From Anthoceros angustus (taxonomy: Eukaryota > Plantae > Anthocerotophyta), in contig MU008192.1 of NCBI GenBank assembly GCA_010909165.1, positions 186,001 through 250,000 of the forward strand: DNA of 64,000 nucleotides. Direction: 5' to 3'. Made by a program: the position numbers and the translations under genes. Positions 15,360 to 50,400 of the stretch are shown here, in pieces. How positions within the stretch are numbered: position 1 is the stretch's first letter; the number at the start of each line of letters is the position of its first letter. Below the pieces are notes generated by a model. That model worked only from the letters and a program-made list of their open reading frames with translations. It was not told the origin of the DNA and searched no databases.

Positions 15360-16523
15360 CTAGGCATACACTTGCCTGATGTTCATGTTGATCCTCGTCT
15401 CCTTGATATAAGCCAGCAGGGAATCTGTAAGGCAATTCGGGGGGCTGAGAGAGGCAAAGTCAGGCAGGTCGGCCTCTTGCGGCTCTACAAACGTTCGGGG
15501 AACGGCGTGGAAGCAACGTCTCGTGGGGCCAGCCATGAGCACCACGTCCCCGCTGCGCAGGAACATGGCGATGGGAGCCTCGTCGCGGGTCTCACCGCCC
15601 AGCAGGAAGATGGCTTTGCATCCTAAGCTGATGCTCACGATGGGTTTGCTCAGATCCTCCTCCATGTCATCTATGTGGCCCCCGAGCATGTCGTCCGGCC
15701 CGTAGTAGTTCACGATTGCTGCTTGCGCCCGGAACCCACCATCATCTCCAGGTTCCCCAGCCGGCACGGCCAGCCTTGCTGCCAGGGCGGCCAGCTGGGG
15801 CGGGAGAGGGGCGTGCGGAAGCTCTGGGTCGTATCCTTTTCTCGACCAATCGAATTGCAGCCCGATGGTCGCCCACCGCAGCTTCCGCATTAGCGTCGGG
15901 GCGGACATCCTTCGAACACCATCGAGGACCTGTGATCTGGGGACAAATTTCCACTTGCTGTTGTTGCCATCGCTGTTGCTGTCGTTGCTGTTGCTGCTCT
16001 CAGCCAGCACAGTATCCTCCTGAGCTGCGCGCCATAGGTCCTCCACAGGCCCGTACAGGGCGTTGTGGTTGGTGCGGTTGGGAGGCTGAGGGAAGCTCCC
16101 CACGCATTGCTGCATCCAGAAGGCTTGCTGCTGCACATCCAGAGCCTCGGGGATGAAGAAGAAGCCGGGGCGGTCGTGCAGGGTATAAACCGGCCATTCG
16201 AATTCCTGGTGCAGTTGCACCTTGCTGTTGCTGTTGCTGTTGCTGCAAGGCCTCGTCTTCCGGAAATCCAAAACCTGTGACAAATCCACCTCAGGCACCT
16301 TGGTCCTGCAACCCAGCACCCACCACAACACATGAGCCTCCTGCTGCTGCTGCGGATGCTGTGAGCAACAAGATAAGGAAAGGAGGACGAAAAGACCCAC
16401 AAACCTGTGCTTGGCATTTCGGCGGGACTGCGTGGATTCCTTCTTGTACCGCTTGTACTGCTTCTCGGCTGTGCGAAAGGCGGTGCGGGCTTCCGCGCCC
16501 TCCTGCGCTTCCAGATAACCCAT
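15360..16523 (-). CDS. ALKBH1: AlkB homolog 1-type Fe(II)/2OG dioxygenase
   Basis: TAFRTAEKQYKRY N-terminal motif, LRWATIGLQFDW, HxD...H triad (GHIDDME...FHAVPR) and RINMNIRQV. One probable in-frame intron at about 16285-16400. Confidence 0.92.
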   Translation of the reverse strand: MGYLEAQEGAEARTAFRTAEKQYKRYKKESTQSRRNAKHRFVGLFVLLSLSCCSQHPQQQQEAHVLWWVLGCRTKVPEVDLSQVLDFRKTRPCSNSNSNSKVQLHQEFEWPVYTLHDRPGFFFIPEALDVQQQAFWMQQCVGSFPQPPNRTNHNALYGPVEDLWRAAQEDTVLAESSNSNDSNSDGNNSKWKFVPRSQVLDGVRRMSAPTLMRKLRWATIGLQFDWSRKGYDPELPHAPLPPQLAALAARLAVPAGEPGDDGGFRAQAAIVNYYGPDDMLGGHIDDMEEDLSKPIVSISLGCKAIFLLGGETRDEAPIAMFLRSGDVVLMAGPTRRCFHAVPRTFVEPQEADLPDFASLSPPNCLTDSLLAYIKETRINMNIRQVYA

Positions 16524-23800: not shown

Positions 23801-24393
23801 TACCACCTTGCTCAACGGGGTTTTTGACCCGAAAGGATCAGGTTTCGGTGCTAATGTGGTTGTAACCGGTCTCACCCGAGAGAGTGTCTGCGAACATGTT
23901 ATTCTTAACCCTTCAGGTTGGGCGGCGGAGGGATGCGCGATGGCTAAGGTCCACAAGTACTCTCCTATGCAGGACGGCCACGCCTTCGTCCCCCTTGCCA
24001 TTGAGACTCACGGAGCCATGGGCAAGGATTTCTCTAGGTTCGTCAAGGCCTGCGCCAAGGCTTATCATAGCCGCAAGAATGGGGTTGGCCTCCCCCTTTC
24101 TTGTATTGTTGCTTTCTTCCTGCAGAGGGTTTCTATCTTTCTACAGAGGGCGTTGGCTTACGCAGTGTACAGAACGACAGCGAGCGCGGGAGATGCAGCT
24201 TCTTCGACACCGGTGGTAAGTAGGCCTTTTCACATTCCTGACCACGAAGTTCTTCGGGCGGTTGGTAGTTTTGAATTGCATGATCGTGGGGGCTAGTCCC
24301 CCTGGTATGGTGCCCTTCGTTGGGTTTTTCTCCCTTTGTTTTTGGGGTGGATGGGTTTTTTGCATCTCTTTTTTATGATAGTCTTCTTTTCCC
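23801..24393 (+). mobile_element. 5'-truncated non-LTR retrotransposon with restriction-like endonuclease C-terminus (CRE/R2-group-like)
   Basis: ORF contains AKVHKY...HAFVPLAIETHGAMG...FFLQRVSIFLQRA. Flanked by a 10-bp TSD GTTTAAAATA at 23791-23800 and 24394-24403. Interrupts the Copia RT at W-YFK-LD. Confidence 0.8.
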
Positions 24394-25750
24394 GTTTAAA
24401 ATACCATTTCATGGCGCTGCTTAAGCTCATATAATGACTTTAATAATTTATAAGCATTACATTTTGCTTTGTCCTTAACTAGTATACCCTCGGGTATTTC
24501 CATATAAATGGTGTGGTCGAGGCCGTCGTATAAGAAGGTTGTCTTGATATCTAGTTGCATAAGCTCTTAGTCATGATGATAAGCTAAGGCCATAAGAATC
24601 CTTCATGAAGTTATTTTTAGTTCGGGACTAAAGGTCTCGTCATATTGAAAACCATATTTTTGAGCATAGCCTTTTGCCACTAACTTGGCCTTATATCGTT
24701 CTATGCTACCATCTGCATTTAATTTAATTTTGAAGGTCCACTTGGAACCTACTAGTTTCCTATCTAGTGGTAGAGAGGTAAGTGTCCAAGTTTTGTTAGT
24801 TCTTGAGGAATCTAGTTCTGACCTTATTGCTTTCTTCCTATTTTCCTTTTCTCCCTTTGAAATCGCTGAAGATGAAGGCATCGGAGGCCGCTGGAGGCAG
24901 AAATGGAGCGCCAAGCTTGGGTCGGCATGGATAAATGGGCCGGTGGGGCCGGGGCGAGGCGAGGCGGCCCACCGTGGGGGCTGGTAGGTCGATGGAAGCA
25001 TCGTCCTCGTCATTGTCATCCCTAGCTTCAAGAGAATGGTGGCATGGTGCTCCCACTGAAGGACTAGCCTGCATGTCTTCCAAGAAGGTGATGTCCCGCG
25101 AGTGAGTGACTAGTTGTGTTTGCGGGTGTAGGAGCTTGAATCCCTTGATGCTTATGGTGTAACCGCCGTAGGTTTTCCATCTAAAATAACAGCAGTTCTT
25201 CTTCGGGCGGCCGTAAGACGGCCTATGGGTACCGACAGATTGCGGCCAATCTCAATACTATCGGGGCGCCGCCTCTGACGAAGATGTATTGCTGAGCCGG
25301 GTTGTTGAGTTTGGTTCTGATAGCTCTAGGAACTTGAGAATAAACTAGTGAGCTGAGTACTCGTAGGTTGGAAAGATCAAGCTTAGATCATATCCAGGCC
25401 TCAAATGGAGTGATGTCGAGCAGAGTCGTGGTAAGGGATCGGTTGTGGAGATAAACGGCATGGGCCATGGCATCGGGCCAATATGTCTTGGGTAAGTTGG
25501 TATGAATCAATATTGAAAGGCTGCAATCCTCGACGGTTTTGTTCATGCGCTTTGCTACGCCGTTCTGCTGAGAGGAGTGAGGTATAGTAACCTATCTAAT
25601 AATGCCATGGTCTTTGGAAAATTGTACAAAAGAGTGTGAACTATATTCTCCGCCACCATCAGAGCAAATGTTGAGTAGAGGTTCACCTGTCTGTTTCTCC
25701 GCCCAAGCCTTATATTCCTTCAAGCAGGTAAGTGCTTGGGATTTAGGGTT

Positions 25751-28043
25751 TAAGAGGTATATGAGGGTGAAGCAAGTGAAGTCACCAATGATGAGCATGA
25801 AGTGAAGGTGGCCGAAAAGGGACCTTCTGAAGGGGCCGCAGAGGTTGGAATGGACCAGTTGTAGGCATTTGTTGGCTCTAATGGCAAGTCTTGTGGGAAA
25901 TGGACTGCGGTGGCTCTTGCCTAGGGAGCAAGCAGGGCATAGGCCAAAGTCTTCACGCCAGAGTGTAATGCCTTGGGCTGCTCTAGTTTTTATCATGTTC
26001 TTCATTCTCTGCAGATGCATGTGGCCCAGACGGGCATGCCATAGAAAGGTCTGGTTTTGTGAGTGAGTGAGTGTGCCTGCAGCTAGGGAGGAGGGTGTGA
26101 CCTAGGGAGTGGCTACATCCAAGTGATACAGATCATCATTATGTAGTGCTCCTGTGGCTAGGAGTTTTTTTTGTGGAGTTTTGATGATGCAACGGCAATC
26201 GCTGAAACAGATATAGCAATTGGATTCATGTACCTTCCTAACGAAAAAGAGGTATTTAATGATTCCTGGTACATGGAGGACATCAGAAATGTGTAAGGTG
26301 GATTATGGTTCTAAGCTAAGTTGGACAGATCCGTGTCCTTGTATAGTGTGTCTTAAGTCGTCACCTAGGCTGATATATTGAGGTGGATTTGTTGGGCTGA
26401 TGTCCGTGAAGTATGCTAAGTGAGGGGTCATGTATTGTGATGCCCCAGAATCTATATACCCGGCATGATGGCCCTGAGTTGAGAAGCAAGAAGCTACAAA
26501 GGTTGCAGGCTGACTAGAAGATGGAGGTAAGAGTTTCTATAATTGATGAAGTTGTGTGAAATATGCCTTGACATGTCTTCTCATAGTTAGGGCTAATTGT
26601 CATGTTGGTCTCCATGATAGGTTGTTTGATGCTAGCCGTTTTCTACATTCCTCATAACTGTGGCCAGGGATTTTACAATATCCACCTCTTCCTCTGGCTG
26701 GGTAGGTGCCTCGGCCTCTTTGAAGTTGTCCACGTGTGGGTCCTCTCCCTCTGAACCTTCTGCTGGTGAAGTATATTGCGCTTGAGGATGCTTTTCCTGC
26801 AAAGGTAGCCTTTTCAATCAGCATTGTGCTGATGACCTTATTAACCGTGAGAGGTTAAACTCCTTGCAAGGATTGCACTCATCACCAATTCCAGGTGGAG
26901 CGTAAGAGGTATATGAGGGTGAAGCAAGTGAAGTCACCAATGATGAGCATGAAGTGAAGGTGGCCGAGGGGACCTTCTCAAGGGGCAGAGGTTGGAATCC
27001 AGGCATTTGTTGGCTCTAATGGCAAGTCTTGTGGGAAATGGACTGCGGTGGCTCTTGCCTAGGGAGCAAGCAGGGCATAGGCCAAAGTCTTCTACGTTGG
27101 TGAGTGTAATGCCTTGGGCTGCTCTAGTTTTTATCATGTTCTTCATTCTCTGCAGATGCATGTGGCCCAGACGGGCATGCCATAGAAAGGTCTGGTTTTG
27201 TGAGTGAGTGAGTGTGCCTGCAGCTAGGGAGGAGGGTGTGACCTAGGGAGTGGCTACATCCAAGTGATCTGATCATCATTATGTAGTGCTCCTGTGGCTA
27301 GGAGTTTTTGTGGAGTTTTGATGATGCAATCAAACAGATATAGCAATTGGATTCATGTACCTTCCTAACGAAAAAGAGGTATTTAATGATTCCTGGTACA
27401 TGGAGGACATCAGAAATGTGTAAGGTGGATTATGGTTCTAAGCTAAGTTGGACAGATCCGTGTCCTTGTATAGTGTGTCTTAAGTCGTCACCTAGGCTGA
27501 TATATTGAGGTGGATTTGTTGGGCTGATGTCCGTGAAGTATGCTAAGTGAGGGGTCATGTATTGTGATGCCCCAGAATCTATATACCCGGCATGATGGCC
27601 CTGAGTTGAGAAGCAAGAAGCTACAAAGGTTGCAGGCTGACTAGAAGATGGAGGTAAGAGTTTCTATAATTGATGAAGTTGTGTGAAATATGCCTTGACA
27701 TGTCTTCTCATAGTTAGGGCTAATTGTCATGTTGGTCTCCATGATAGGTTGTTTGATGCTAGCCGTTTTCTACATTCCTCATAGTGGGCTGTGGATTTTA
27801 CAATATCCACCTCTTCCTCTGGCTGGGTAGGTGCCTCGGCCTCTTTGAAGTTGTCCACGTGTGGGTCCTCTCCCTCTGAACCTTCTGCTGGTGAAGTATA
27901 TTGCGCTTGAGGATGCTTTTCCTGCAAAGGTAGCCTTTTCAATCAGCATTGTGCTGATGACCTTATTAACCGTGAGAGGTTAAACTCCTTGCAAGGATTG
28001 CACTACGCTCACCCAGAATTCCAGCAGGGTGGAGCGTAAGAGG
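25751..28043. repeat. ~1.15-kb tandem duplication inside Copia A (indel-rich near the junction)
   Basis: Units start at TAAGAGG 25751, 26903 and 28037 (periods 1152 and 1134). Near-identical apart from short deletions. Confidence 0.9.
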
Positions 28044-29565
28044 GCTGTAGAGAGGTCTCCTATGATGCCGAAGCCCGTGGCTTGGAATTTACTTGTCCAG
28101 CTCAGACCTGAAGTTCATGGTATGATGATCTACCTGGTCCCTTTTGCTCATTCGCAGTCCAAAAAAAATTTTAATTGTGTGCACAATGTGCATGATGTCA
28201 GTAGATGCATATATGTCGTGGAGTTGTTTCCACGCATCTACAGTTGAGTCTATCCCCTCAATTTGCTGCATCTTGCCTTGCCTTATAGATTGTATGATGA
28301 CGGTTTTAGCTTGTTGGTTGGCGTCATCCCATTTGCCATTCTATAGCTGATTTCAGAATATTTGTGATTTTGAACTTCCAGATAGCAAAATTGTGTTACT
28401 GATCGTCGAATCGGCTGATGTGAGAGGTTGACATTCCAGGCTGTGAACTCATGTATGTGGCTAGGAGTTGTATGTGTTTTTTTTAATATATATAGGCTAA
28501 AGACGGTGTGTCTTATAGTGGGGTAAATTTCTAGTCTCATGGTGATGAGAATTTTGTAAGATCTGATTTGATCAAGGGTTGAAGGTGTTTGACTTTGTTC
28601 CAAGGCATTTAACTTATGGAGAATGTATTCCTGAATTGTTTGTATTTCAGGAGCAGCTGGCAGGATAAAGAAATTGTGTTGTCTGCAGATGTTGGAAAAA
28701 TCTGTGGTAATTTTATCCTTGATGTGTGCAGGAGAGAGGAGAGTGCTCATCTCAAAGCAAGAGGTATAGTCCCTAATCATGGTGAACAGGAAGCTGACAA
28801 GAAAGCTACTTGGATGTAGCCCCAATTGTAGTAATTATGATCTAGCTTTGAATTAATTCTTCCCCTATTAATAGCAGTACCGAATAGGTACGTATCCAGC
28901 CATAATGCAACATATCTTCGCCAGCTTCTTTCAAGTAGGACAGTTGTCTATGATTCATTGAAAATTCTAGTTGAGAAGCAGCCCTATTGGCCCTGACAAG
29001 GGGACGTCTTCTTCTTTGATAACCTGGCATGGCGCCTCGACATGCAGGTGGTTGTCATGTGGCTGGATGTGGGAATTAAGATCAAAGCTGGCGCTCTGAT
29101 ACCATGTGACAAAGCGAGGCTTTTGGGGATTGTATTTCTCTTAGATTGAATGTCGGTGTTGCGCCTAAGACCTAACCGTTTCATAGAGTAACATTTGATA
29201 TCTATGACCTTACGAACCGTGCCCTAAGGGCTAGAGGTTATTAATTTAACACCAATACGGGGCCACCAGGGATGTGTGACGTTGGGAGAGTTTCCTGTCC
29301 CTCAAGTGGAGCCTGACGAAATCCTAGTTCGAGTAAAGGCTATTGCGCTCAACCCATCGATAAGAAGCTTAGCCTGGGCAACTTAGCTTCCGCGGATGCT
29401 CCCTTTCCGGTAAGAAGGGTATGGGATGGGTATAGGGTAGGATGGTTCTGTCTATGGCAGCTAACTATACTCTTTTGGTGTGACGTGGTGTGGGTGGGGA
29501 AATGGCAATGCACAGACTGTGCCAGGGTACAACGTTGCTAGTGTGGTGGTCCAGCTGGGTGTCCA

Positions 29566-29727
29566 ATGAAGGCATTCAAGGAAGGGGATGAGGTGGATGC
29601 TCACGTCACCGAGTACCCCGTGAAGGCATTCAAGGAAGGGGATGAGATGGATGCTCACGTCAATGAGTACCCTGTGAAGGCATTCAAGGAAGGGGATGAG
29701 GTGTATGCTCACGTCAATGAATATCCC
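29566..29727 (+). repeat. 54-bp in-frame triplication in the AOR copy 3 exon
   Basis: Encodes (M/V)KAFKEGDE(V/M)(D/Y)AHV(T/N)EYP three times. Confidence 0.92.
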
Positions 29728-30069
29728 CTGAAGCCCAAGCAGCTGCAGGAACCCTAGCGCAGTACACTGGCTTTGAAGCCACCAATTTCAGCTTGAGCAT
29801 CCTAGAAGCTCAAAGTTGGTGGCTTTGGGTTTGTGGCATTGCCTAAGGAACTCTCGGGTTGAGGGTAGATTACAGAGGAAGATTCTTTGGAAATTCTCGC
29901 TGTCTAGTAAAACCCACAGTAACTTGCCCAAGGAAGAATTTGCTAGCTTGTAGGCGGACCCCAGGTAGTTATACCGTAAGGACGAACTAGGGCCAGAGGG
30001 CTTGAAGTGAGGTTAGATTAGGAAGATGATGGGTTGAGGTTGAGTATGTGGATGATACGTTGATTATTG

Positions 30070-31668: not shown

Positions 31669-31925
31669 ATGGGTGAGGCAGCAGCGTAGCAGCAAGCTCC
31701 AGCATCAGGAGGAGGAGCAGCAGGGTGGTTCCTGTGCAGAGCTGACAGAGTGGCCACCAAGCTGAATGAAACTGTGACGCATTTGCCACAAGATGGGGGA
31801 GGCGGCAGCATAGCAGCAAGCTCCAGCAGCACAGGAGGAGGAGCAACAGGGTGGTTCCTGTGCAGAGCAGACAGAGTGGCCACCAAGCTGAATGAAACTG
31901 TGACGCATTTGCCACAAGATGGGGG
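31669..31925 (+). repeat. ~125-bp tandem repeat immediately upstream of the PPR start, encoding two MGEAAA* uORFs
   Basis: ATGs at 31669, 31793 and 31919 (spacing 124 and 126). The first two read ATG GGN GAG GCN GCA GCN TAG. Confidence 0.85.
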
Positions 31926-34759
31926 TGCAGCTGCCGCAACCGCCAGCCAAGCCCAAGTGGGCACTTCCGGATTCCCCGACCTTGGGACTCCTCCAACAAC
32001 TATGGCCAAGCCCAAGCCCAAGCCCAAGCTCAAGCTCAGTGATCCGCGTCGTGTCGGGGGGACGGGTACTTGGCCCGGGGCATGCCATGCACGGCACTGC
32101 GGGAGAAAAGGAAATCACCCAGGGAGACCAGCAAGAGCTCTTGTGGCGGTGCTTCTTCCTGGATCCATCCGTGTGGTGGGACAACAGGGCGGACAAGAGG
32201 AGCCCCCGCCATCCCGACTTCAGGCACAAGACTTCCAAGGAGCCCCTGTGGCTAGACAGTCTCCACAAGCCTGGCTGGGTGGATTTGCAGCTAGCCCGAC
32301 TGGATCATATTCAGATGAGGGGGCTGCATGACTCAGACCCAGATGTAATGCTTCACACCTTGGAGCTGAATGACGCTGTCGAAGCTTTGGATGTCCTTGT
32401 GCACCAGGGATGTCAGATCAGCCCGACTGTCTTCTATCGTGTGCTCAAGCAGTGTGTGGCAGAGAAGGATCTTGGGTGTGGGAGGCGAATTCACAGTCTT
32501 GCTCTCACATCGGGGTGCGGGTCAAGTGCGTTCTTGGCCAACCACATCATTGGCATGTACGCTTCTCATGGCAAACTGGAGGAAGCAATGCAGGTTTTCA
32601 CTGGAGTGACCACCCCCGACGTCTACATGTGGTCCTCCATTATTTTGGCTCATGCACGGCATGGGCAGCCCACACAGGCGATCAGGCTGTATCGACAGAT
32701 GCGAGGAGCAGGCGTGAAGCCAGATAACCGCTTGTTTGTGGCAGCTCTTAAAGCTTGTGCCTCTGCACAAGACCTGCTTTCTGGCAAGCAGGTGCATGCT
32801 GATATTCGGGCCGGTGGTGGTGTGGAGACCGACGTGTTTGTTGGTAACAGCCTGGTGAATATGTACGCCAAGTGTGGAAGCTTGGAGGATGCTCGGGAGG
32901 TGTTTGATAGTTTGGTCAAAAGGGATGTGGTGTCATGGACTGCCATGATCACTGGATACACTCAGCAGGGGCGGGGTCGAGATGCCCTGCTTCTGTACGC
33001 TAGCATGCAGCAGGAGGTGGTCATCCCTGCTAATCGTGTTACATTCGTATGCCTTCTGCAAGCTTGCGCTGCAGTGGGGGCGCTGCAGCAGGGCAAGCAG
33101 CTGCACTCGGAGATCCGTGAAAGGGGCCTTGAAGCTGATTCTGTCATTGGCAACAGCCTGGTGAACATGTATGCCAAGTGCAGGAGTTTGGAGAATGCTC
33201 ACAAAGTGTTTGACACCCTGCCCAGAAGGGACGTGTGGACATGGAATGCAATGATCGCAGGATATGCTCAGCAGGGGCTGGGGCAAGAGGCCCTGTTGCT
33301 GTATGCAAGAATGCAACAGGAGGGCATCACTCCACCTGACCACGTCACATTCTCGTGCCTTCTTCAAGCATGTGCCAGTGTGGGAGCCCTGCAGGAAGGA
33401 AGGCAGCTTCACTCACAGATCCGTGAAAGGGGCCTTGAAACCGAAGCAGTCATCGGTAACTGCCTCGTGCATATGTATACTAAATGTGGGAGCTTAGACG
33501 ATGCTCGCAAGGTGTTTGACAATTTACCAATCCGAGATGCGGTAACTTGGACTGCCATGATTGCAGGGTATGTGCAGCAGGACAGTAGTCGAGAAGCCTT
33601 GGCCCTGTATGCAAGCATGCACCAGCAAGGTGTCAGTATGGTGGATCCTTTCACCTTGGTCTGCCTCCTGCGAGCATGTGCTAGCGTAGGAGCTCTGCAG
33701 CAGGGGCAGCAGCTTTGTGAACAGATCCATCACGCTGGACTGGAGGATGACGTCTACGTTGGCAGCTGCCTGGTGGATATGTACGCAAAGTGTGGAGGTT
33801 TGGAAGATGCTCGCCGGGTGTTTGATAGCTTGCCCGCAAAGAATCTGGTGACATGGACAGCGATGCTGAATGGGTATGCCGAGCATAACGACGGTAACAT
33901 GGCAATCCGTTGTTTTGAAGACATGCTTGAACAACGTATCCAGCCAGATGAGACGACTTTTACTTGTCTGTTTGTTGCATGCAGTCACGCTGGTCTGGTG
34001 CAGGAGGGCCAAAGGTATTTTAGGCTGATGGTTGAGGAACACGGAATTGTGCCCACCGATTATCACTACAGCTGCATGGTGGATCTTCTCGGCCGATCAG
34101 GGCAACTGGATGAGGCGGAAATCATATTGCACAACACTTCATTCGTGAATGACGTGATTGGCTGGAGAGCTTTACTGAGTGCTTGCAGGAGCTACGGTGA
34201 TGTAGAGCGGGGTCAGCGATGCTTTGACCACCTTGTAGAATTGGAACCTGAAAATGCCAGCTCATATTTGCTGCTCGGGAACATATATGCGAATGCAGGC
34301 AGGTGGGACATTGTGGGCAGGATAGAAAGGTTGCGGAAATCAGCGGGTGCTGTAAAGAAGCCTGCAAAGGCATGCATCGAAGTGAAGCAAGAGGTGCACG
34401 AGTTCACAGTGGGGGAAGAGAGGTCAGACATATCCTCCAAGCTCAGGAGTGTGAATACGAGGTTGAAGGAGGAAGGAGGCCACGTGCCACAGACACAATT
34501 AGTGTTGAAGTCAGTATCTGAGCAGGAGAAGGAGGATGCCCTGTGTGGGCATGCAGAGAAACTGGCATTGGCCTATGGTTTGCTGAATACACCCGACGGG
34601 ACACGTTTGGTAGTTACCAAGAATCTTCGAATGTGCAATGACTGTCACAGCAGCACGAAACTCATGTCCAGTCTAGAGAAGCGTGAGATCATTGTGAGAG
34701 ATGCACATAGAGTGCATCGTTTCCTGGATGGGTCCTGTTCGTGTCGGGATCGAAACTGA
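31919..34759 (+). CDS. PLS-PPR-E1-E2-DYW:KP RNA-editing factor (DRN end) with N-terminal OSB-type PDF motif; intronless
   Basis: 946-aa ORF with 17 countable L/S/P, P2, L2 and S2 motifs, then E1/E2, KPAKA, HAEKLA, CNDCH and CSCRDRN*. N-terminus has LWRCFF.DPSVWWDNR..KRSPRHPDFRHK...PLWL....PGWV. Confidence 0.96.
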   Translation: MGVQLPQPPAKPKWALPDSPTLGLLQQLWPSPSPSPSSSSVIRVVSGGRVLGPGHAMHGTAGEKEITQGDQQELLWRCFFLDPSVWWDNRADKRSPRHPDFRHKTSKEPLWLDSLHKPGWVDLQLARLDHIQMRGLHDSDPDVMLHTLELNDAVEALDVLVHQGCQISPTVFYRVLKQCVAEKDLGCGRRIHSLALTSGCGSSAFLANHIIGMYASHGKLEEAMQVFTGVTTPDVYMWSSIILAHARHGQPTQAIRLYRQMRGAGVKPDNRLFVAALKACASAQDLLSGKQVHADIRAGGGVETDVFVGNSLVNMYAKCGSLEDAREVFDSLVKRDVVSWTAMITGYTQQGRGRDALLLYASMQQEVVIPANRVTFVCLLQACAAVGALQQGKQLHSEIRERGLEADSVIGNSLVNMYAKCRSLENAHKVFDTLPRRDVWTWNAMIAGYAQQGLGQEALLLYARMQQEGITPPDHVTFSCLLQACASVGALQEGRQLHSQIRERGLETEAVIGNCLVHMYTKCGSLDDARKVFDNLPIRDAVTWTAMIAGYVQQDSSREALALYASMHQQGVSMVDPFTLVCLLRACASVGALQQGQQLCEQIHHAGLEDDVYVGSCLVDMYAKCGGLEDARRVFDSLPAKNLVTWTAMLNGYAEHNDGNMAIRCFEDMLEQRIQPDETTFTCLFVACSHAGLVQEGQRYFRLMVEEHGIVPTDYHYSCMVDLLGRSGQLDEAEIILHNTSFVNDVIGWRALLSACRSYGDVERGQRCFDHLVELEPENASSYLLLGNIYANAGRWDIVGRIERLRKSAGAVKKPAKACIEVKQEVHEFTVGEERSDISSKLRSVNTRLKEEGGHVPQTQLVLKSVSEQEKEDALCGHAEKLALAYGLLNTPDGTRLVVTKNLRMCNDCHSSTKLMSSLEKREIIVRDAHRVHRFLDGSCSCRDRN

Positions 34760-35002: not shown

Positions 35003-35352
35003 GTGTGGGAGAAAAGTGTGAATTCACATTTTCTTATACATAGGTCCTTCCGAGAAGCTGAGCGGTCCCGAACTTCCCTTCCATGGCATTGGCAATGCAT
35101 GGGGTAGAACTAAGTCTCCTCTTCTTAAAATTGTGTGGGAGAAAAGCGTGAATTCACGTTTTCTCTCTTCCAGGATTTCCTTCACGTGTACATAGGTATT
35201 TTAGAGAAGCTGGGCGGTTTCGAACTTCCCATCCCAAGCGTTGGCAGTGCACGGGGGTTGTGCAAAGTCCCCTGTCCTTAAAATTGTGTGGGAGAAAAGT
35301 ATGAATTCACGTTTTCACGTATGAACTTCCCATCCCAAGCATTGGCAGTGCA
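35003..35352. repeat. Degenerate ~130-150 bp tandem repeat (about 2.5 copies) between convergent 3' ends
   Basis: Recurring blocks gtgggagaaaag..tgaattcac, gaacttccc and ttggca.tgca. Confidence 0.75.
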
Positions 35353-35435: not shown

Positions 35436-36749
35436 TCACCTGATCGGACAGGAGGGATTGCACGGGTAAGCGCAATCAACAAGGTGCGCAGGCTTGCGAT
35501 CGAAGTACCAATCCCCGACGGCATCCGCTATGGTCCTGCCATCCAGCTGCACCGCATGAGCCCCGTTCCAGGATATGGGCCACTCCGTCTGGCAATGCGT
35601 GAAGCAAGAGTCCACAAACATGCCGGAGCCGTTCTTATCCTTGAGCGGCTGCAACTCCTTGAGCATGGCGTCTCTGAAACCATGCACCACCTGCAACTGC
35701 TCTTCCGAACAGCGAGCCAAATCATCACGGCAGCGGTCCCACTGCCGGGGGGGATCCGAACCCCCTGGGACCAGCACATTCCGCACCTGCCAGTCGTCGT
35801 AGGGAGAATTGAGCACAAACAGCGGCGTGCGGATGTAGTGAACCAGAACTTCAGGGAAGAAACAGTCCAGCGCCGGCCGCGAAGCCGTGCAGGCTGCAGG
35901 AAGGCTCACTCCCGCTCCCTGCATCTCCACAACCCCGGCGTACAGATCCGCGATGGTAGGCCGGCCCGCCACATCCGGCACCCGCATAAAGAATCCGGCA
36001 TCGCTCAAGCACCGCACCCGCTTCGCCTCCGGAAGCAGCTCCGCAAAATCATCACAATGCAGCATGGCAGCAAGAGCCCCTGCTGAGCATCCTACCAGCA
36101 GGGCGTGCTCCGCGTCCTTGAGCCCTAGTCGCAGCAGATCTGCCATGACGGCTCTCCAAATTTCCCTGCCACGGAAGAAGATGCCGGCTTCCTCCTTGTC
36201 GGTGCCGTGGCCGGCGAAGGAGCCGCCATCGCAGTACCGCACCTTGACCCGCGTCCAGGGATGGAAGTCAGGGTTGGCAGCTGGAGAAGAGCTGAGAATG
36301 CCCTCGAAGGGCATGGCCTCCATGTAAGCCGAGGATCCGAGCCGAGTGCGGGCTCGGTGAACGCAATCCTTAACATCTCTGCACCATCCCCCGCCTTCCA
36401 GCATCACGATCCAGCTCTTGCTGCCGGGACCGCTGCCCTGCTGCAGGTGGTAGGCCGGCGGGGAGCCGTCAAGGCAGACTCCATCGCCCGGCTCCTCCAC
36501 CACCGTCTTCTCCACCATGATCACTCTCCTCTCCGACTCCGGCTCCGGCTCCGCCTCCTCCTGGCCGGGATCGGCCATGCCCCGGCTCTCCAGAGGCTTG
36601 TCGGGGTGCCATGTGAGAGACACGGCTGCCACAGCCAGCAGAATGGTGGCCAGGCCTGCCATGTACTCCATCCATCCCCATCGCCGCTTTGCTGCCTGCA
36701 GCGTCTCCCGGAATGGCCTCAGGTACGATCCTCCGCCTCGCGGCTGCAT
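35436..36749 (-). CDS. PAE: Pectin acetylesterase, intronless
   Basis: AVCLDGSPPAYH-like motif, LEGGGWC, RYCDGGSF, GCSAG nucleophile, FLLNSxYD-like motif and DCxYPCNPSC terminus. N-terminal TM/signal segment. Start inferred at MQPRGG (36749). Confidence 0.93.
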   Translation of the reverse strand: MQPRGGGSYLRPFRETLQAAKRRWGWMEYMAGLATILLAVAAVSLTWHPDKPLESRGMADPGQEEAEPEPESERRVIMVEKTVVEEPGDGVCLDGSPPAYHLQQGSGPGSKSWIVMLEGGGWCRDVKDCVHRARTRLGSSAYMEAMPFEGILSSSPAANPDFHPWTRVKVRYCDGGSFAGHGTDKEEAGIFFRGREIWRAVMADLLRLGLKDAEHALLVGCSAGALAAMLHCDDFAELLPEAKRVRCLSDAGFFMRVPDVAGRPTIADLYAGVVEMQGAGVSLPAACTASRPALDCFFPEVLVHYIRTPLFVLNSPYDDWQVRNVLVPGGSDPPRQWDRCRDDLARCSEEQLQVVHGFRDAMLKELQPLKDKNGSGMFVDSCFTHCQTEWPISWNGAHAVQLDGRTIADAVGDWYFDRKPAHLVDCAYPCNPSCPIR

Positions 36750-37471
36750 TCTGCATTCCGCCACAACCTTCCACACAGCCACACACTTTTCCCCTAACTG
36801 ACAACTCACATACACACATCCACATACATACATGGACCAACATCCAAATATGTACATGGGCTACCACTACCATCCACATACATACACAAATATAAACATG
36901 TCTCATCTCATCTTCCACGCCCTCCAGACCAAGCACAAGTGATCCGGCCCGGGTCAGCCAGAATCGGAGTCGGTCGCCAATGGACCCGCTACAGGTCGCA
37001 TTGCCCGTGCTGGGCATCGCTGCTGCTGCCGCCGTCACCTTCTACGCTGTGAGCTTCAAGGAAATGAGCGATGTGAGTGCTTTCTGAGAATGCCTGCCTT
37101 CCTGCCTGCCTGCCGGTCTGCTTGCCGCTAGCTTTAAATTTGAGAGGGGCCGGGGCCGGGGACGGGGGCTCATGATTGTGCGCAGAAATCGTTTGAGGAT
37201 CTTGACATCAAGTTGGCCACCAAGACCCAGCTCAAATCTGGCCAGACCTCCAAGCAGAGACGGCAACTGAGAAAGGTCCTGAAGGAGAAGAAGGCTGATT
37301 CATAATCCCTGGTCTTCAGTCTTTTTACTCGAAGAACGCATGTAGAACTCAAGTTATTTGAATGTCGCATATGAAGTGTGGGTAGAGTAGTGGGCATGTG
37401 GTGTAAGTGAATGATGAGCCAGTGCTCCTGGCTCACAGCAACCCGACTCTTTGGTGATGGAACCTACCAGT

Positions 37472-42605: not shown

Positions 42606-44189
<1,584 letters not shown>

Positions 44190-44483
44190 GACGTCACTGC
44201 CATGCAGAGCAGCATCACCTGCGACTACAATGCATCGACACACCTACGGAGACCACAGACATATTACTGCAGGGACGAGAGCAGCACCCGCCACTGTTTT
44301 CCTCCTAAGGCAAATGCCTTCACAGCATGAATGAATGTATGTAGTCGCCTAGTACACTATGTATGTTGTGGGAGGCTTGCTGTCGCAACAGCAGAACCGT
44401 TACAGCATTCATACCAAATCAGGGTCTGTGCACGTGTACTGGGTAAGATCCACACATGAGACGACAGACAAAAGCGAAATTGC

Positions 44484-45333
44484 TTACAGCACGTCCGCTG
44501 GCACCAGTGCCACCGCAGACCCTTTGAGAACGAGGGCAATGCCCTTGTGACAGGTGGTCGCAAACGAGACCCTGCAGCAAACCAGAGCGATAAGCGATGT
44601 CAGATACAGAGATCTGCAGCATAACACAAATCACTCGAGTGCATCCGACGGAGGAGGAAGGAGGAAACAACTTGTAATGCCGTCTCAGCTTCCGTGTCTC
44701 AGCCACTTCAACTTGGGCCACCACACTCTCTCCGACGAAGACAGGATTGCAGAACTCTAGAGTCTGAGAAACATACACAGCTCCTGGCTGTTCCTTCCAC
44801 AAACGAGGCAGGGGGACAAGCAAGAAAAAAAAGGAATGAAACGCTATTCGTGCTAGACAGGGTCGTGTTTTACTCTGCTCCTGGCAAGTTGGATCCATTG
44901 CTCCCGAAAACAAAAGCAAGGCATTGATTGACGCACACAGCAACTGACTGCAACCACAGGGTTTCACACTTACAAACTTGGAGCCTATGATTGCGGGAAA
45001 GAGGCCGGCATACAGCATGCCATGGACCAAACATCCTTCCTCAAATCCAGCAGCTGCTGCCGCCGAAACCTGCCTATGTATGGGGTTGGTGTCCCCACAA
45101 AGCTGTGCGTATGCCTCCACATCGTGTGCCGAGAAGAATCTCTCCATGCTGTAATTTTGGCCCTTGTTCAGCCTCTCTGCATTGCCCGATACTGATGATG
45201 ATGCATCTGGTGATCCTGCTGTGTCTGCCAAGTAGCTCGTGATGAAGTGACACGGCAACTTCCTCCAGAGCTGCTGGTGCTGCTGGTGCTGCCGAGGCCA
45301 CCCTAGATACGCCATCCGCGTAAGCATGAACAT
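44484..45333 (-). CDS. mtHD: MaoC-like (mitochondrial-type) 3-hydroxyacyl-ACP dehydratase (3 exons)
   Basis: DVEAYAQLCGDTNPIH hydratase-2 motif, VHGMLYAGLFPAIIG and PGAVYVSQTLEF. Presequence-like N-terminus. Confidence 0.85.
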
Positions 45334-45764
45334 CACATTCACATTCCAGAACCCTAGAATGGCATTATTGTTGCTTGCCTTGCCCTCCAAGGGAAGGGGA
45401 GAGAATTGTGGGGGAATGAAACCCTGCACCTTCCTTGCTACTCCTCGAGTCAGGCCCCAGGAAGCTTGCCTCCTTCTCTGTCCAGCGAGCGACCTAAAAA
45501 GGAAAAAAGAGGCGCAAAAAACAAGGAGGCGAAAGGGAAAACCCACCGCACCGCCTTTCTGTGAGAGAGGAGGAACATCTTCGGGCCAGGCCAGGCACAT
45601 GGCAACCATTGCCGTCTCGCCACCGCCGCCTGGACCTGGACCGCAGCTCGCTCCCACCGCAGCTCCCACCACCTGCACATGGTACGACCGGGTCGCGCTT
45701 GCTGTCCCCTCTTCTTAATTCTTGCTCACACTCCCTTGTTGAAATTGGGTGACAAAAACAGCAG

Positions 45765-46406: not shown

Positions 46407-47492
46407 AAGTGTTGCCTTGAGCTTCTACCAGCCTCTTCACTTCTTTTTCGCTTATGCTAGGGATTCTGCACTCGGAAATTGGTGGTGGTACTGGGTTCCA
46501 AGTGTCTATGCTCAACGCGCCCTCTGACGAGGAACAGGAGTGGACAAGGGTTGGTCTGTCCGGATTCTATTGAGGTGGTCATTCGAGTGGGATCGCAGGG
46601 GTGTGTTGTAATCGTTGACTGGCAGAGGGTCCAGTAGCGTGTGGTCGACTGAGAAAACAGATAAGCACATTGGCCTGCTGTGAATCAGGCAGGCACACAG
46701 CCAAGATCGGTCACCTTCAGGTGAAGTTGTTACTGCAGTGAAAGGAATGGCGGAAGCTGTAGAAGCGGAGAAAGTCCACCTCTGCAATGCATGGCTGCCG
46801 CCACCCATCCGTGAGGGAGTAGCTGAGGAGAGGACGAAATTCCATGTTGCTGTACAAACCGTCCAAAGCGAATGGAAACCGCAAGAGCCGCAGTCGAGGC
46901 CAGGTTCTTAAGGGCCGCTTTCAGTGCCTTCATGGATGTCCTAGTTCTGGCGACTAAGACCATCGAAGAATTCGGCCACCCTCCTTTGTTGGGATGCTGA
47001 AAGTGTTGCCTTGAGCTTCTACCAGCCTCTTCACTTCTTTTTCGCTTATGCTAGGGATTCTGCACTCGGAAATTGGTGGTGGTACTGGGTTCCAAGTGTC
47101 TATGCTCAACGCGCCCTCTGACGAGGAACAGGAGTGGACAAGGGTTGGTCTGTCCGGATTCTATTGAGGTGGTCATTCGAGTGGGATCGCAGGGGTGTGT
47201 TGTAATCGTTGACTGGCAGAGGGTCCAGTAGCGTGTGGTCGACTGAGAAAACAGATAAGCACATTGGCCTGCTGTGAATCAGGCAGGCACACAGCCAAGA
47301 TCGGTCACCTTCAGGTGAAGTTGTTACTGCAGTGAAAGGAATGGCGGAAGCTGTAGAAGCGGAGAAAGTCCACCTCTGCAATGCATGGCTGCCGCCACCC
47401 ATCCGTGAGGGAGTAGCTGAGGAGAGGACGAAATTCCATGTTGCTGTACAAACCGTCCAAAGCGAATGGAAACCGCAAGAGCCGCAGTCGAG
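46295..47492. repeat. Apparently exact 594-bp tandem duplication covering the PCC1 last exon, the intergenic region and the PA200 5' end
   Basis: The 10-bp microhomology CGCAGTCGAG occurs at 46295, 46889 and 47483. No differences seen by eye. Confidence 0.95.
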
Positions 47493-50400
47493 ATATGCGA
47501 CACTCCGGTGGATTTCTGTTCTCACCACATTCTTGAAGGCCAAGAGTGACCTTGACCTGGCAGATTTGCAGTCTCTTGCAGAACTGAGCCTCGACATCTT
47601 TCTGCAGTCCAATGACCATCTCTTTGTCCAGGTTCGATGGGGGCATTGCCTACTTACACTTGTCAAGAAGTACCGGAAAAAGCTTGTCTTGAGCATTGAG
47701 TGGAGGCCCTTCTATGTTCTGCTCCTCAATACTCACTTCAACAGACGTCATAGCTACGAAGGTCTAGCATTGAAGCAGACACACTTGGAGCTGGTGTCGT
47801 CATTGGTGAGAAGCTGTCACCGCTACTTCCCTTCAGAGTCTGCTGTGGAGATATGGGCCGAGTTCAAACCTGCCCTGGAGGATCTGTCTCACAATCTGGC
47901 GCTCGAAGCAGTGGGTTTCATTTCATTGTTTCTCCCCACCAAATCTGCGGCTTCAGATTGGGACCGTACTTTTTTCACTCCGCAATGGCTGGCAGACTGT
48001 CTCAAGTTATGGTCGGCAATCCCAAACTGCTACTATTGGAATCTGCAATGGTCCTCCCTGGTGGGACGATACATTCAGCACTGTGCCCCTGCTGTTGCTG
48101 ATTTGGAGCCCGTCATGCCTACTCTCTTCATGCACTTTCTGAGGTCATTTGAGGTACCTGTTGGGAAGGCCAGTGCATCATCGCCCGTACAGCGATCTGT
48201 TCCGCGTGAAGTTATGCTTGCCTTCAACTCTGGCTGGTCAACATCAAATGCTAAAGTGATAGCCAGGACCATTGTTTTTCTGCTGCATCCAGGGGGTTCA
48301 GCTCAGGGTCAGCTTGAGATTATTGTTGAGCTCCTTGAACAGTACTACCATCCGTCTAATGGTGGATCGTGGACGGCCTTTCTTGAACAGTTTCTTCGAT
48401 ATCTTGTCATGTTTTTCCTCAAGCGCCTGGCCAAGGAGCAAGGCAAAAGGTTGAAGTCAAAAAGTGGCATGGACTGTGACCACTTTCTAGGCCCGGAGGA
48501 ACGGGTGGCTTTTGTTAAAGCCATGTTAAAGCTAATCGAGAGGGGCCAGTACAGCAAGAATGGGCAGCTGGCAAGGACTGCTGCAGATGCGGCTACGAAC
48601 CTGGCATATGTGGAACCAGCCCTGGTTCTACCTCTGGTCATAGCTGGCTTTCAAACTGCCATGGATACTATCACAGCCACTCATCAGTTGGAATCAGCTC
48701 TGAACACTCTGGCGCTGGCTGCCAGATCTATACTGCTAGTGTCAGCAAGGGAGGTTGCCTCACGGCAGTCGGCTGACAAGGATGTGGACATGCTCGATGC
48801 CACCGAAGAGAACATGGCCGTCATGGGCTACAAGGAGGTCCTTGTCGCCGCCATGTTCGACACACTCCCTGGGATGGATGCCAACGACCCTCCCAAAACC
48901 CTGGCAACATTGCGGTTCTATTTCGCTGTCATATCAAGCATCCTAGTTTTGGGTGGCATCGAGGAAGGTGGGAATGTCTTCCTGCCAATTGACTGGTCTC
49001 TGTGGCTGGATGAGTTTCTCTCCCGTCTGTTTGTACTGCTGGTGCATTTGGAACCGAGTAGTCAGGCAGGAGATGTGGGAGTCGATGAAGGGTTCAGTCG
49101 GTCCTCTCATAGTTTTCTGCTACAGCGTGGATCCGTGTGTCATGCTATGATTGAACTCCTGTTTGGTAGGTTAACAAAGCCGCTCTTCCAGCAGGGTTTG
49201 AAAAAGGTGGCAAAGTTTGTGCACACCAGTGTCCTACCTGGAGCTTCAGACGAAATAGGTCTACTTTGCCGCGCAGCGGTATATGCCAGTCCGGTCGAGG
49301 CAACCGAAGTCCTTCTTAAGCCGATAATGATGTCCATAATCTCTGCCCTGGCTGAGGCTCCTTCCAGGGGTTTGAGGAATCAAGCAGATGGCAAGCTGGC
49401 AAGCTTGTCTCCTGCTCTGTCCACGTCAGTCTCTCACCAGATTAATGTTCTTGCTCTAGCTGTAACGTTTGGTGGAGAAGCTCTCCTCCCTTACAAGGAT
49501 CTGCTTAACAGGGTGATTGATGCAGCCTTTGGGGCACCTTCCACCAAGGTGAATGAGGCTGGCAGCCATCTGCTGAGTAATCTGCTGGGGAGTTTGATAC
49601 GATACTATCCACTTGAAGAATACAGGTATGGGGAGAATTATTTCGCTGACATTGAGGCATGGATGAGTATCAAGGACTTTGATGTGGAGACGTTCAAGGG
49701 TCAGGTGCCAGTATGGCATTCGCCAAGTGCAGAGGAAGTTGCATATGCCAACGCGTTGTTGGACTCACACCTGCGATGTGTACTCCCTGAGTTGCTGAGC
49801 TTTTGCCAGCAGGCACAGACAGGTGATGTTTTACGGCAGGAGAAGGAAGATCTGCGAGTAGTCCTTTTACGCATGGAAGCAAGTCTCCATGGTGTGAGAT
49901 CTTGCTTGCCTGATTTCAGGCGCCCATCGGGTGCAGATTTGTCTGGCCAATCTCTAACGGTTGCTGGGGCTGCCGGAGCCTCTGTTGGATCTGTGGAATT
50001 GCGAGAGGGGACTGCAGAAGCTCTTCATGTCGCATGTGAGTCTTTCCTGAAGGAGAGGGCAGATGACACCAAGCTGCTTCTGACTCTGGTGCGCGTCATT
50101 GGATTGACTGGGAACTATGGGTCGCTGGAATTTGAAGACTGGTTAGCTTGGAGATCATCTAGCAGAAGCTTTCTGGAGCCTCAGATCAATCTGATAACAG
50201 GCACATATACGAAGGGACCACGGCGTCCACAATGGTTCCTCATCGAAAAAGTCTACTTGCATAGTGAATGGCGAGCGTCCCAGGCTGGGTACAGGCCATA
50301 CACTTCCACAACCAAGAAGCTGGCTCCTCCAGCCCATGTTCTCTCGCTCTCCGGAGATCTCTTGAAACTCTCTCTCCATAATTATGATACTGTGCGAGGT

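What the first reader, a model, noticed from the sequence alone, without database searches (positions are those of the whole stretch)
32135..34759. OSB-type PDF ssDNA-binding motif fused to a DYW:KP (putative U-to-C) PPR editing factor
Seen: between the targeting peptide and the first PPR, the protein has ELLWRCFFLDPSVWWDNRADKRSPRHPDFRHKTSKEPLWLDSLHKPGWVDLQL. Established: this matches the ~50-aa PDF motif (W..FF..P..WWDNR..K..P..PDF.HK.....LWL....P.WV) of plant organellar single-stranded DNA-binding OSB proteins, where it mediates ssDNA binding, normally alongside an SSB-like domain. Here it is in one intronless ORF with 17 PLS-PPRs, E1/E2 and a DYW:KP deaminase-like domain. Inference: an editing factor that could be tethered to organellar nucleoid ssDNA or R-loops (co-transcriptional editing), that gains extra single-stranded nucleic-acid affinity, or that acts on ssDNA. 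I am not aware of this architecture being functionally described, but cannot check the literature.
Basis: partly seen in the sequence, partly recalled or inferred. Interest (0 to 1): 0.85.

Follow-up and report, generated by a model that had tools for sequence, protein, structure and literature searches.

The report
PDF motif on PPR editing factor
[quoted passage not shown] The combination is real and old, and it is common in mosses, liverworts, lycophytes and ferns. I found no description of it in the literature I could search, and it is not specific to the U-to-C type of editor.

Summary
Residues 71-128 of the 946-aa ORF (31919-34759, +) are a true OSB-type PDF motif. A profile built only from non-PPR PDF copies scores it at 68 bits (E=1e-17), and it is the only copy in the window. 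The rest of the protein is about 17 PLS PPRs, E1/E2 and a DYW domain that meets every sequence criterion of the KP class.

The interpretation needs correcting. The fusion is neither a one-off nor tied to KP. N-terminal PDF motifs (1-3 copies) occur in many PLS-PPR proteins:
- Diphasiastrum: 25 of 36 sampled.
- Also Ceratodon, Sphagnum, Calypogeia, Adiantum and Pteridium.
- Most of these carry a canonical DYW or only an E domain.
- Most KP-type relatives lack PDF; four were checked at DNA level.
- None of 35 gymnosperm PPRs has it.

PPR-linked PDFs fit a single origin (AU p=0.92). The motif is predicted to form a compact alpha/beta fold (pLDDT 93) with no relative in the PDB.

The most likely role is an accessory single-strand-binding or nucleoid-tethering module that catalysis does not need. 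I found no paper describing it, including a 2026 kingdom-wide survey of editing factors. I rate it a new variant of a known kind, of moderate to high interest.

The parts
31669..31925 (.). 126-bp tandem repeat (2.1 copies) just upstream of the ORF and overlapping its first ATG
   Evidence: Tandem Repeats Finder; sequence. Earlier copies carry the same ATG followed by a stop after 6 codons, so the true start codon is uncertain.
31919..34759 (+). Complete uninterrupted ORF, 946 aa plus stop: PDF-PLS-PPR-E1-E2-DYW:KP protein
31919..32128 (+). N-terminal 70 residues (P/S/G-rich, 4 acidic residues). Candidate organellar presequence, not verified; the alternative start is Met57 at nt 32087.
   Evidence: The regions upstream of PDF in relatives are short and not conserved.
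32129..32302 (+). PDF motif (residues 71-128), homologous to the ssDNA-binding motif of OSB proteins
   Evidence: OSB-only HMM 68.4 bits, E=1e-17. Profile-profile comparison 99.9%, E=3.9e-33. Library search. AlphaFold pLDDT 93 for the motif alone.
32303..32359 (+). Linker between PDF and the first PPR-like helix pair (residues 129-147)
   Evidence: Lowest-confidence stretch of the model, pLDDT 58-67. Variable in length and sequence among relatives.
32360..34150 (+). PLS-class PPR array (residues 148-744): one partial repeat plus about 17 P/L/S repeats ending in P2-L2-S2
   Evidence: Pfam PPR, PPR_1, PPR_2, PPR_3. Repeat boundaries read from the sequence. The model matches PLS-PPR crystal structures 9kfx and 5iww.
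34151..34354 (+). E1 (residues 745-779) and E2 (780-812) motifs
   Evidence: Pfam E_motif at 759-820, 1.9e-16
34355..34756 (+). DYW deaminase-like domain of the KP class (residues 813-946). It has the KP box KPAKA (34358-34372), HAE (34550-34558), the Lys88 equivalent K901 (34619-34621), CNDCH (34634-34648), H..CSC (34715-34744), and ends in DRN.
   Evidence: Pfam DYW_deaminase 2.3e-35. Motif positions. KP-class criteria from PMC11845758. Comparison with relatives.

Best explanation
This is an intact nuclear gene for a PLS-class PPR editing factor with a KP-type DYW domain, so it is a putative U-to-C editor of organellar RNA. It belongs to an old subfamily of PLS-PPR proteins in non-seed land plants that I found no description of. 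Members carry one to three OSB-type PDF motifs between the presequence and the first PPR.

Shown:
- The PDF motif is a true homologue of the OSB motif.
- It keeps the same conserved aromatic and basic residues.
- It is predicted to fold on its own into a small helix / three-short-strand / helix unit.
- A flexible linker of about 20 residues joins it to the PPR solenoid.
- The PPR-linked copies are compatible with a single ancient fusion that then spread with PPR gene duplication and was often lost.

Inferred:
- The PDF module is an accessory that binds single-stranded nucleic acid independently of sequence.
- Since OSB PDF motifs prefer ssDNA over RNA, its most likely job is to hold the factor on exposed single strands of the transcribing organellar nucleoid. 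The PPR array would then meet its target on the nascent transcript (co-transcriptional editing).
- The PPR array still sets specificity and the DYW:KP domain still does the chemistry.
- The module is helpful but dispensable, and it has no special link to U-to-C editing.

The confidence of 0.45 is for the whole statement, including the inferred tethering role. The architecture, the homology and the subfamily membership on their own are near certain.
For: Architecture: one 946-aa ORF with PPR, E_motif and DYW_deaminase.

KP class: KP box, H-A-E, Lys88 equivalent and a non-DYW C-terminus.

PDF homology:
- OSB-only HMM, 68 bits, E=1e-17.
- PPR-linked versus OSB-type profiles, 99.9%, E=3.9e-33, with the same conserved columns.
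- Source-named OSB2 and OSB3 among the hits.

Subfamily:
- PDF plus PPR in Diphasiastrum (25 of 36 sampled), six Ceratodon DYW proteins, Sphagnum, Calypogeia, Adiantum, a Pteridium transcript and several Logan assemblies.
- PDF is N-terminal in all but one copy, the second PDF at residues 679-734 of P0228, with 1-3 copies per protein.

Single origin:
- PPR-linked PDFs cluster: 4 label changes versus 39 in shuffles.
- The tree constrained to hold them together is better than the free tree by 45 lnL, p-AU 0.92.

Fold:
- pLDDT 93.2 and pTM 0.78 for the motif alone.
- pLDDT 86-94 in the PPR context, with a low-confidence linker.

Ligand:
- The PDF motif is reported as responsible for ssDNA binding in OSB proteins and sufficient for it in AtOSB1. 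OSB1 and OSB2 prefer ssDNA to dsDNA or RNA (PMC6963530; PMC4166229; PMC6451138).

Dispensability:
- Most KP-type relatives lack PDF.
- Moss PPR56 edits in E. coli after everything more than 14 residues upstream of its first PPR is removed (PMC10482289).
- Designer KP proteins edit U-to-C in bacteria and human cells (PMC11845758).
Against: - No binding, localisation or expression data exist for any PDF-PPR protein. The ligand (ssDNA, RNA or a protein) is inferred from homologues that are about 40% identical over 55 residues.
- The PPR-linked copies form their own group and may have shifted preference toward RNA.
- A PDF placed directly at the end of the PPR array that faces the 5' side of the RNA fits an RNA clamp equally well.
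- Frequent loss of the motif among close paralogues shows that its contribution is not essential.
- Organellar targeting of this protein was not tested, and the start codon is uncertain.
- The activity of natural KP proteins is still unknown (PMC11845758).
Confidence: 0.45

Rival explanations
1. 5' RNA clamp. The PDF module binds the same RNA strand just upstream of the PPR footprint. This adds sequence-independent affinity or keeps the strand unfolded, as a built-in helper for RNA binding rather than a DNA tether.
For: - PDF is N-terminal in all but one copy, next to the repeats that face the 5' part of the target, and a short flexible linker joins it.
- Moss factors work without the accessory proteins that flowering-plant factors need (PMC12153344).
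- MORF helpers are exclusive to seed plants (PMC13386178), the group in which no PDF-PPR was seen: 0 of 35 gymnosperm PPRs.
- PPR-linked PDFs form a separate group from OSB PDFs, which leaves room for a change of ligand.
Against: - OSB1 and OSB2 bind RNA worse than ssDNA (PMC4166229).
- The conserved residues are the same in both contexts.
- The N-terminal position is forced anyway, because the DYW domain must be C-terminal.
Confidence: 0.3
2. Protein-protein module. The PDF motif mediates oligomerisation or docking onto OSB or other nucleoid proteins, not nucleic-acid binding.
For: - AtOSB2 is a tetramer (PMC6963530).
- The many conserved Trp, Phe and Pro residues could form an interaction surface.
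- The fold has no nucleic-acid-binding relative in the PDB.
Against: - The PDF motif of AtOSB1 alone is reported to be sufficient for ssDNA binding (PMC6963530).
- No interaction data exist.
Confidence: 0.1
3. The factor acts on DNA. PDF brings the DYW:KP domain to organellar ssDNA, and the protein edits or cross-links DNA bases.
For: - PDF prefers ssDNA.
- A designer PPR array has been crystallised on ssDNA (PDB 5orq, listed).
Against: - The same PDF module sits on ordinary DYW:PG and E-only PPR proteins.
- All known DYW activities are on RNA.
- Nothing in the sequence distinguishes this protein from RNA editors.
Confidence: 0.03
4. The PDF stretch is not part of the mature product. It could be untranslated leader sequence, with translation starting at Met133, or a decaying relic without function.
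For: - The first ATG lies in a tandem repeat.
- An in-frame Met follows the motif at nt 32315.
- Many paralogues have lost PDF.
Against: - All signature residues are intact at 68 bits against the OSB-only profile. A non-coding relic would not stay this well conserved.
- The frame is open from 31919.
- PDF and PPRs lie in one ORF of a Pteridium transcriptome contig (P0103) and in annotated Diphasiastrum isoforms.
- Met133 would leave no presequence at all.
Confidence: 0.04

Closest known systems
[quoted passage not shown]
   Same: - They share the ~55-residue PDF motif, with the same conserved W/P/W-D-R/K/PDF-HK/LW/P-WV positions.
- They are plant-specific and organellar.
- The motif occurs in 1-3 (sometimes more) copies.
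   Different: - OSBs have an SSB-like OB-fold domain, with the PDF motifs at the C-terminus.
- Here there is no OB-fold: only 70 residues precede the motif, and it sits at the N-terminus of a PPR editing factor.
- PPR-linked PDFs group apart from OSB PDFs.
PPR-DYW:KP proteins of hornworts, lycophytes and ferns, and the designer KP2/KP3/KP6 U-to-C editors
   Same: - PLS array, E1/E2 and a DYW domain with the KP box.
- H-A-E instead of H-S-E, the Lys88 equivalent, CxDCH and a variable C-terminal triplet.
   Different: - The published KP descriptions I could read do not mention an N-terminal PDF motif.
- Most KP-type relatives found here lack one.
- Designer KP proteins contain only PPR, E and DYW parts.
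Moss PPR-DYW:PG editing factors (e.g. Physcomitrium PPR56 and PPR65)
   Same: - Stand-alone PLS-E1-E2-DYW editors that need no MORF helpers.
- Six Ceratodon DYW proteins and several Sphagnum DYW proteins carry the same N-terminal PDF motif.
   Different: - They are C-to-U (PG) editors.
- In heterologous assays of PPR56 the N-terminus is cut to 14 residues before the first PPR.
- The one Physcomitrium relative retrieved (P0406) has no PDF.
PPR proteins with other accessory nucleic-acid-binding domains (maize PPR4 with an N-terminal RRM; PPR-SMR proteins)
   Same: The principle is the same: a PPR array joined to a second, independent nucleic-acid-related domain (PMC9459714).
   Different: - Those are P-class proteins with RRM, SMR, NYN or LAGLIDADG domains.
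- A PDF motif on PLS-class editing factors is a different combination.
MORF/RIP helper proteins of seed-plant editosomes
   Same: Possible functional analogy: an accessory element that supports binding by PLS-PPR factors. The taxonomic distributions are complementary. MORF is exclusive to seed plants, while PDF-PPR was seen only in non-seed plants.
   Different: - MORFs are separate polypeptides with an unrelated fold, and they contact L-type repeats.
- There is no sequence or structural relation to PDF.
- The analogy is inference only.

Membership tests
PDF motif (OSB-type ssDNA-binding motif) | Significant match to a profile built from PDF motifs of non-PPR (OSB-type) proteins only | tested here: met
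   68.4 bits, E=1e-17 at Z=1e6, residues 72-127. Profile-profile comparison 99.9%, E=3.9e-33.
PDF motif (OSB-type ssDNA-binding motif) | Signature residues including the eponymous Pro-Asp-Phe | tested here: met
   W76, P83, W86, D88, R90, K93, P99-D100-F101, K104, W111-L112, P118 and W120-V121 are all present. They are invariant or nearly so in alignments A1-A4.
PDF motif (OSB-type ssDNA-binding motif) | Binds single-stranded DNA | not testable with these tools
   Known only for Arabidopsis OSB1 and OSB2 (PMC6963530, PMC4166229).
OSB protein family | SSB-like OB-fold domain N-terminal to the PDF motif(s) | tested here: not met
   No SSB or OB-fold hit in Pfam at E<=1. Only 70 residues precede the motif. 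No other long + strand ORF lies upstream.
OSB protein family | PDF motifs at the C-terminal end of the protein | tested here: not met
   The motif is at residues 71-128 of 946, followed by the PPR, E and DYW parts.
PLS-class PPR RNA-editing factor | Tandem P-L-S pentatricopeptide repeats ending in P2-L2-S2 | tested here: met
   Pfam PPR families, 1e-77 to 1e-79. About 17 repeats read from the sequence. The N-terminal part of the model matches PLS-PPR crystal structures.
PLS-class PPR RNA-editing factor | E1/E2 extension and a C-terminal DYW deaminase-like domain with HxE and CxxCH zinc motifs | tested here: met
   E_motif 1.9e-16 and DYW_deaminase 2.3e-35. HAE 878-880, CNDCH 906-910, H..CSC 933-942.
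PLS-class PPR RNA-editing factor | Import into plastids or mitochondria and editing of a defined site | not testable with these tools
   No targeting predictor, organelle genome or transcriptome of the source organism was available.
DYW:KP subclass | Lys-Pro pair in place of the Pro-Gly box at the start of the DYW domain | tested here: met
   KKPAKACIEV at 813-822. Criterion from PMC11845758; comparison with PG and KP relatives.
DYW:KP subclass | Ala or Cys instead of Ser after the catalytic His (HxE) | tested here: met
   H-A-E at 878-880.
DYW:KP subclass | C-terminal triplet not conserved as D-Y-W | tested here: met
   The protein ends in D-R-N.
DYW:KP subclass | Active-site lysine (Lys88 of KP6) | tested here: met
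   K901 in TKNLRMCNDCH is position 88 when counted from the K of the KP pair.
DYW:KP subclass | Catalyses U-to-C conversion | not testable with these tools
   The activity of natural KP proteins is stated to be still unknown (PMC11845758).

The most novel reading that the evidence does not exclude
The PDF module was part of the ancestral land-plant editing factor and is a built-in helper. It couples PLS-PPR editors to single-stranded nucleic acid at the transcribing nucleoid, or clamps the RNA 5' of the footprint. It was lost in seed plants around the time the separate MORF/RIP helpers arose. At least for moss PPR56, heterologous assays cut the N-terminus off, and designer editors omit it. If other assays do the same, a real contributor to native editing efficiency or specificity, and a direct physical link between organellar DNA and RNA editing, has gone unnoticed.
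Probability: 0.15. Interest if true: 0.75.

Novelty: new variant of a known kind. Interest (0 to 1): 0.58.

Why it matters
PLS-PPR editing factors are usually described as presequence + PPR array + E/DYW. A conserved, independently folding, OSB-type single-strand-binding motif at the N-terminus of many such factors, from bryophytes to ferns, adds a fourth module that current surveys miss because Pfam has no model for it.

If the motif binds ssDNA as it does in OSBs, it gives a concrete and testable mechanism for co-transcriptional, nucleoid-associated editing. If it binds RNA, it would help explain how early-land-plant factors work without MORF-type helpers.

Either way it bears on the design of PPR-based C-to-U and U-to-C editing tools, which are built from consensus sequences without this module. 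The comparison with and without the motif in the established E. coli or human-cell assays is simple to run.

Tried and rejected
- **Pfam scan of the ORF:** no family covers residues 1-140.
- **PDB sequence search with the PDF profile:** nothing below E=0.3.
- **Foldseek of the PDF-only model against the PDB:** best E=5.6, TM about 0.2, so no structural relative. Foldseek of the PDF+PPR model returns only PPR structures.
- **First word-based homologue search restricted to the motif:** only one hit (P0001), because of the length filter.
- **Identifying the source organism:** failed.
  - The PPR, PAE, PA200 and MDHAR proteins of the window are not on record as exact products.
  - No Rfam or tRNA hit in the window.
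  - The SRA run numbers of the closest relatives appear in no searchable paper.
- **Physcomitrium:** the one relative retrieved (P0406) has no PDF, and it aligns only downstream of the PDF of its Ceratodon counterpart. Whether the characterised Physcomitrium factors carry PDF stays open.
- **Zaegel et al. 2006:** not held in the library, so the OSB biochemistry is cited second-hand.
- **Poly(A) tails on Logan contigs L001 and L002:** none, so they cannot be called transcripts.
- **Rejected readings:** chance similarity; a KP-specific fusion; a true OSB family member (no OB-fold).
Full report
**What is in the sequence.** The window holds one uninterrupted ORF on the + strand, 31919-34759 (946 aa).
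- Pfam finds many PPR repeats, an E motif (759-820) and a DYW deaminase domain (854-944). It finds nothing for the first ~140 residues.
- Read directly, the protein has these parts:
  - a P/S/G-rich N-terminus of 70 residues;
  - the motif (71-128);
  - a short linker;
  - one partial and about 17 full P/L/S repeats (148-744);
  - E1 (745-779) and E2 (780-812);
  - a 134-residue DYW domain.

**The C-terminal domain is KP class.** The published criteria are a Lys-Pro pair in place of Pro-Gly, Ala or Cys after the catalytic His, and a variable C-terminal triplet (PMC11845758).
- The window protein has KKPAKA, H-A-E and ...CSCRDRN.
- It also has the active-site lysine at position 88 counted from the KP pair (K901), and intact CxDCH and H..CSC zinc motifs.
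- By sequence it looks catalytically competent. The same paper notes that the activity of natural KP proteins has not yet been shown.

**The motif is a real PDF motif.**
- A profile of the window copy and three copies from the only close hit (P0001) was run against 1.84 billion representative proteins. It found 1103 proteins at E<=1e-3 and 56 at E<=1e-30.
- Most hits are 250-530 aa with the motif near the C-terminus. They include proteins that their sources name OSB2 (Asparagus) and OSB3 (Anthurium), and a green-algal protein.
- To avoid circularity I built an HMM only from 202 motif copies of 143 proteins without PPRs. It hits window residues 72-127 at 68.4 bits, E=1e-17 for a million-sequence search space.
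- Profiles of PPR-linked and OSB-type copies align over all 55 columns at 99.9% probability, E=3.9e-33, with the same conserved W, P, W-D-R, K, P-D-F, H-K, L-W, P and W-V positions.
- The window contains no second copy.

**The fusion is neither unique nor KP-specific.**
- Among the 150 best motif hits, seven are PPR proteins with N-terminal PDF:
  - P0001 (three PDF copies plus a PLS-E protein);
  - two Diphasiastrum complanatum loci with many annotated isoforms;
  - two Adiantum proteins;
  - an ORF from a Pteridium transcriptome contig;
  - a Logan fragment.
- Among the 120 best full-length homologues of the window protein, 35 carry the motif. These include 25 of 36 Diphasiastrum proteins, two Calypogeia (liverwort) proteins, a Ceratodon (moss) protein and Sphagnum proteins.
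- A further search added five more Ceratodon DYW proteins and more lycophyte members.
- Where a DYW domain is present it nearly always ends in the canonical ...CSCGDYW with a PG box. Many others end after the E motif.
- Of about 16 KP-type close relatives, only P0239 and P0273 have PDF.
- For four KP-type genes of the same sample (P0225, P0219, P0234, P0206), six-frame scans of the loci, including the 1-3 kb fetched upstream, show no PDF in any frame. L008 carries P0273 and, next to it, a second PDF-bearing ORF that starts a PPR array.
- None of 20 Cryptomeria and 15 Ginkgo PPR proteins in the same list has the motif. Neither does the single Selaginella relative retrieved or the single Physcomitrium relative.

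**Evolution.**
- On a tree of 56 PPR-linked and 60 OSB-type motif copies, the two labels need only 4 changes, against 39 in shuffles.
- The tree forced to keep all PPR-linked copies together has a higher likelihood than the free search found (+45 lnL, p-AU 0.92). One ancient fusion is therefore not rejected.
- The alignment has only 55 columns, so this does not prove a clade.
- The motif occurs in mosses, a liverwort, a lycophyte, ferns and this KP-bearing plant. The simplest reading is a fusion early in land-plant history, spread with the PPR expansion and then repeated loss. This is inference.

**Structure.**
- AlphaFold2 with 116 motif copies gives pLDDT 93.2 and pTM 0.78. The elements are a helix, three short strands (around WWDNR, PDF-HK and LWL) and a helix.
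- In a 265-residue model with the first PPRs, the motif keeps pLDDT 86-94. The linker drops to 58-67 and the PPR part matches PLS-PPR crystal structures.
- The isolated fold has no relative in the PDB, by structure or by sequence.

**How it probably works.**
- What is established elsewhere:
  - OSB1 and OSB2 prefer ssDNA over dsDNA or RNA (PMC6963530, PMC4166229, PMC6451138).
- The PPR-linked copies keep the same conserved residues, so I take the module to be an accessory binder of single-stranded nucleic acid.
- I favour tethering to single-stranded regions of the transcribing nucleoid, so that editing is coupled to transcription (about 0.4).
- Second is a clamp on the RNA 5' of the PPR footprint (about 0.3).
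- Third is a protein-protein role (about 0.1).
- The module is not needed for catalysis or site recognition, for three reasons:
  - Most KP paralogues lack it.
  - PPR56 is active in E. coli with its N-terminus trimmed to 14 residues before the first PPR (PMC10482289).
  - Designer KP proteins without it edit U-to-C.
- MORF helpers are exclusive to seed plants (PMC13386178). PDF-PPRs were seen only outside seed plants. This pattern is suggestive and untested.

**Literature.**
- 'PDF motif' occurs in three relevant papers of the searchable library, all on OSB proteins.
- No paper combines OSB or PDF terms with DYW or PPR editing factors.
- A review of Physcomitrium PPR proteins does not mention OSB or ssDNA binding. 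A 2026 survey of editing factors in 364 genomes, with a section on domain fusions, does not mention PDF or OSB.
- The library lacks most subscription journals, including Zaegel 2006, so an earlier mention cannot be excluded.

**Caveats.**
- The first ATG (31919) lies in the third, partial copy of a 126-bp tandem repeat. Met57 is an alternative start, and Met133 would skip the motif.
- The intact signature argues that the motif is translated. So does the presence of PDF and PPRs in a single ORF of a fern transcriptome contig.
- Organellar targeting, expression, the RNA target and the source organism could not be determined.

**Verdict.** This is a member of a widespread PDF-bearing subfamily of PLS-PPR editing factors that I found no description of. 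It is a new variant of a known kind, and its link to U-to-C editing is incidental.

Noticed in passing
window 31669-31925: A 126-bp tandem repeat (2.1 copies, 93% matches) ends on the first ATG of the PPR ORF. The earlier copies hold the same ATG followed by a stop after six codons. So the annotated start and the 'targeting peptide' are uncertain.
   Followed up: partly
window 15360-16523(-), 35436-36857(-), 42615-44189(+), 44419-45678(-), 47332-52857(+): Five neighbouring non-PPR genes are each a single long uninterrupted ORF: an AlkB-like 2OG oxygenase, pectin acetylesterase, MDHAR, a MaoC dehydratase and an 1841-aa PA200/PSME4 proteasome activator. For pectin acetylesterase, MDHAR and PA200 the Pfam matches span the family models from end to end. 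Intronless housekeeping genes of this size are unusual for a land plant. The source organism could not be identified.
   Followed up: partly
window 56148-57731 (+): ORF with copia-type gag, Pol beta-barrel and gag-pre-integrase domains: an LTR retrotransposon fragment.
   Followed up: no
window 24000-30000: A stretch with strong positive GC skew (0.15-0.22), lower G+C (~0.46) and no ORF of 200 aa or more. It contains a 54-bp tandem repeat at 29567-29733.
   Followed up: no
window 35037-35316: A 153-bp tandem repeat (1.8 copies) in the spacer between the PPR gene and the convergent pectin acetylesterase gene.
   Followed up: no
L008:2676-5162 and L008:6657-7418: In a relative (sample SRR33208241), two PDF-bearing PPR genes lie next to each other on one contig. 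Four other KP-type genes of the same sample have no PDF. Presence of the motif varies among close paralogues within one genome.
   Followed up: yes
P0034, P0002, P0003, P0036 (hits): PDF motifs also occur in other contexts in annotated angiosperm proteins. There are three copies ahead of a kinesin motor (Coptis chinensis), arrays of 11-13 copies (13 in Kingdonia uniflora) and an OSB-like part joined to an ICR2-like protein (Striga). Some may be merged gene models.
   Followed up: partly
P0228 residues 141-196 and 679-734: A Diphasiastrum PPR protein has a second PDF motif in mid-protein, probably two tandem PDF-PPR genes merged in the annotation.
   Followed up: no
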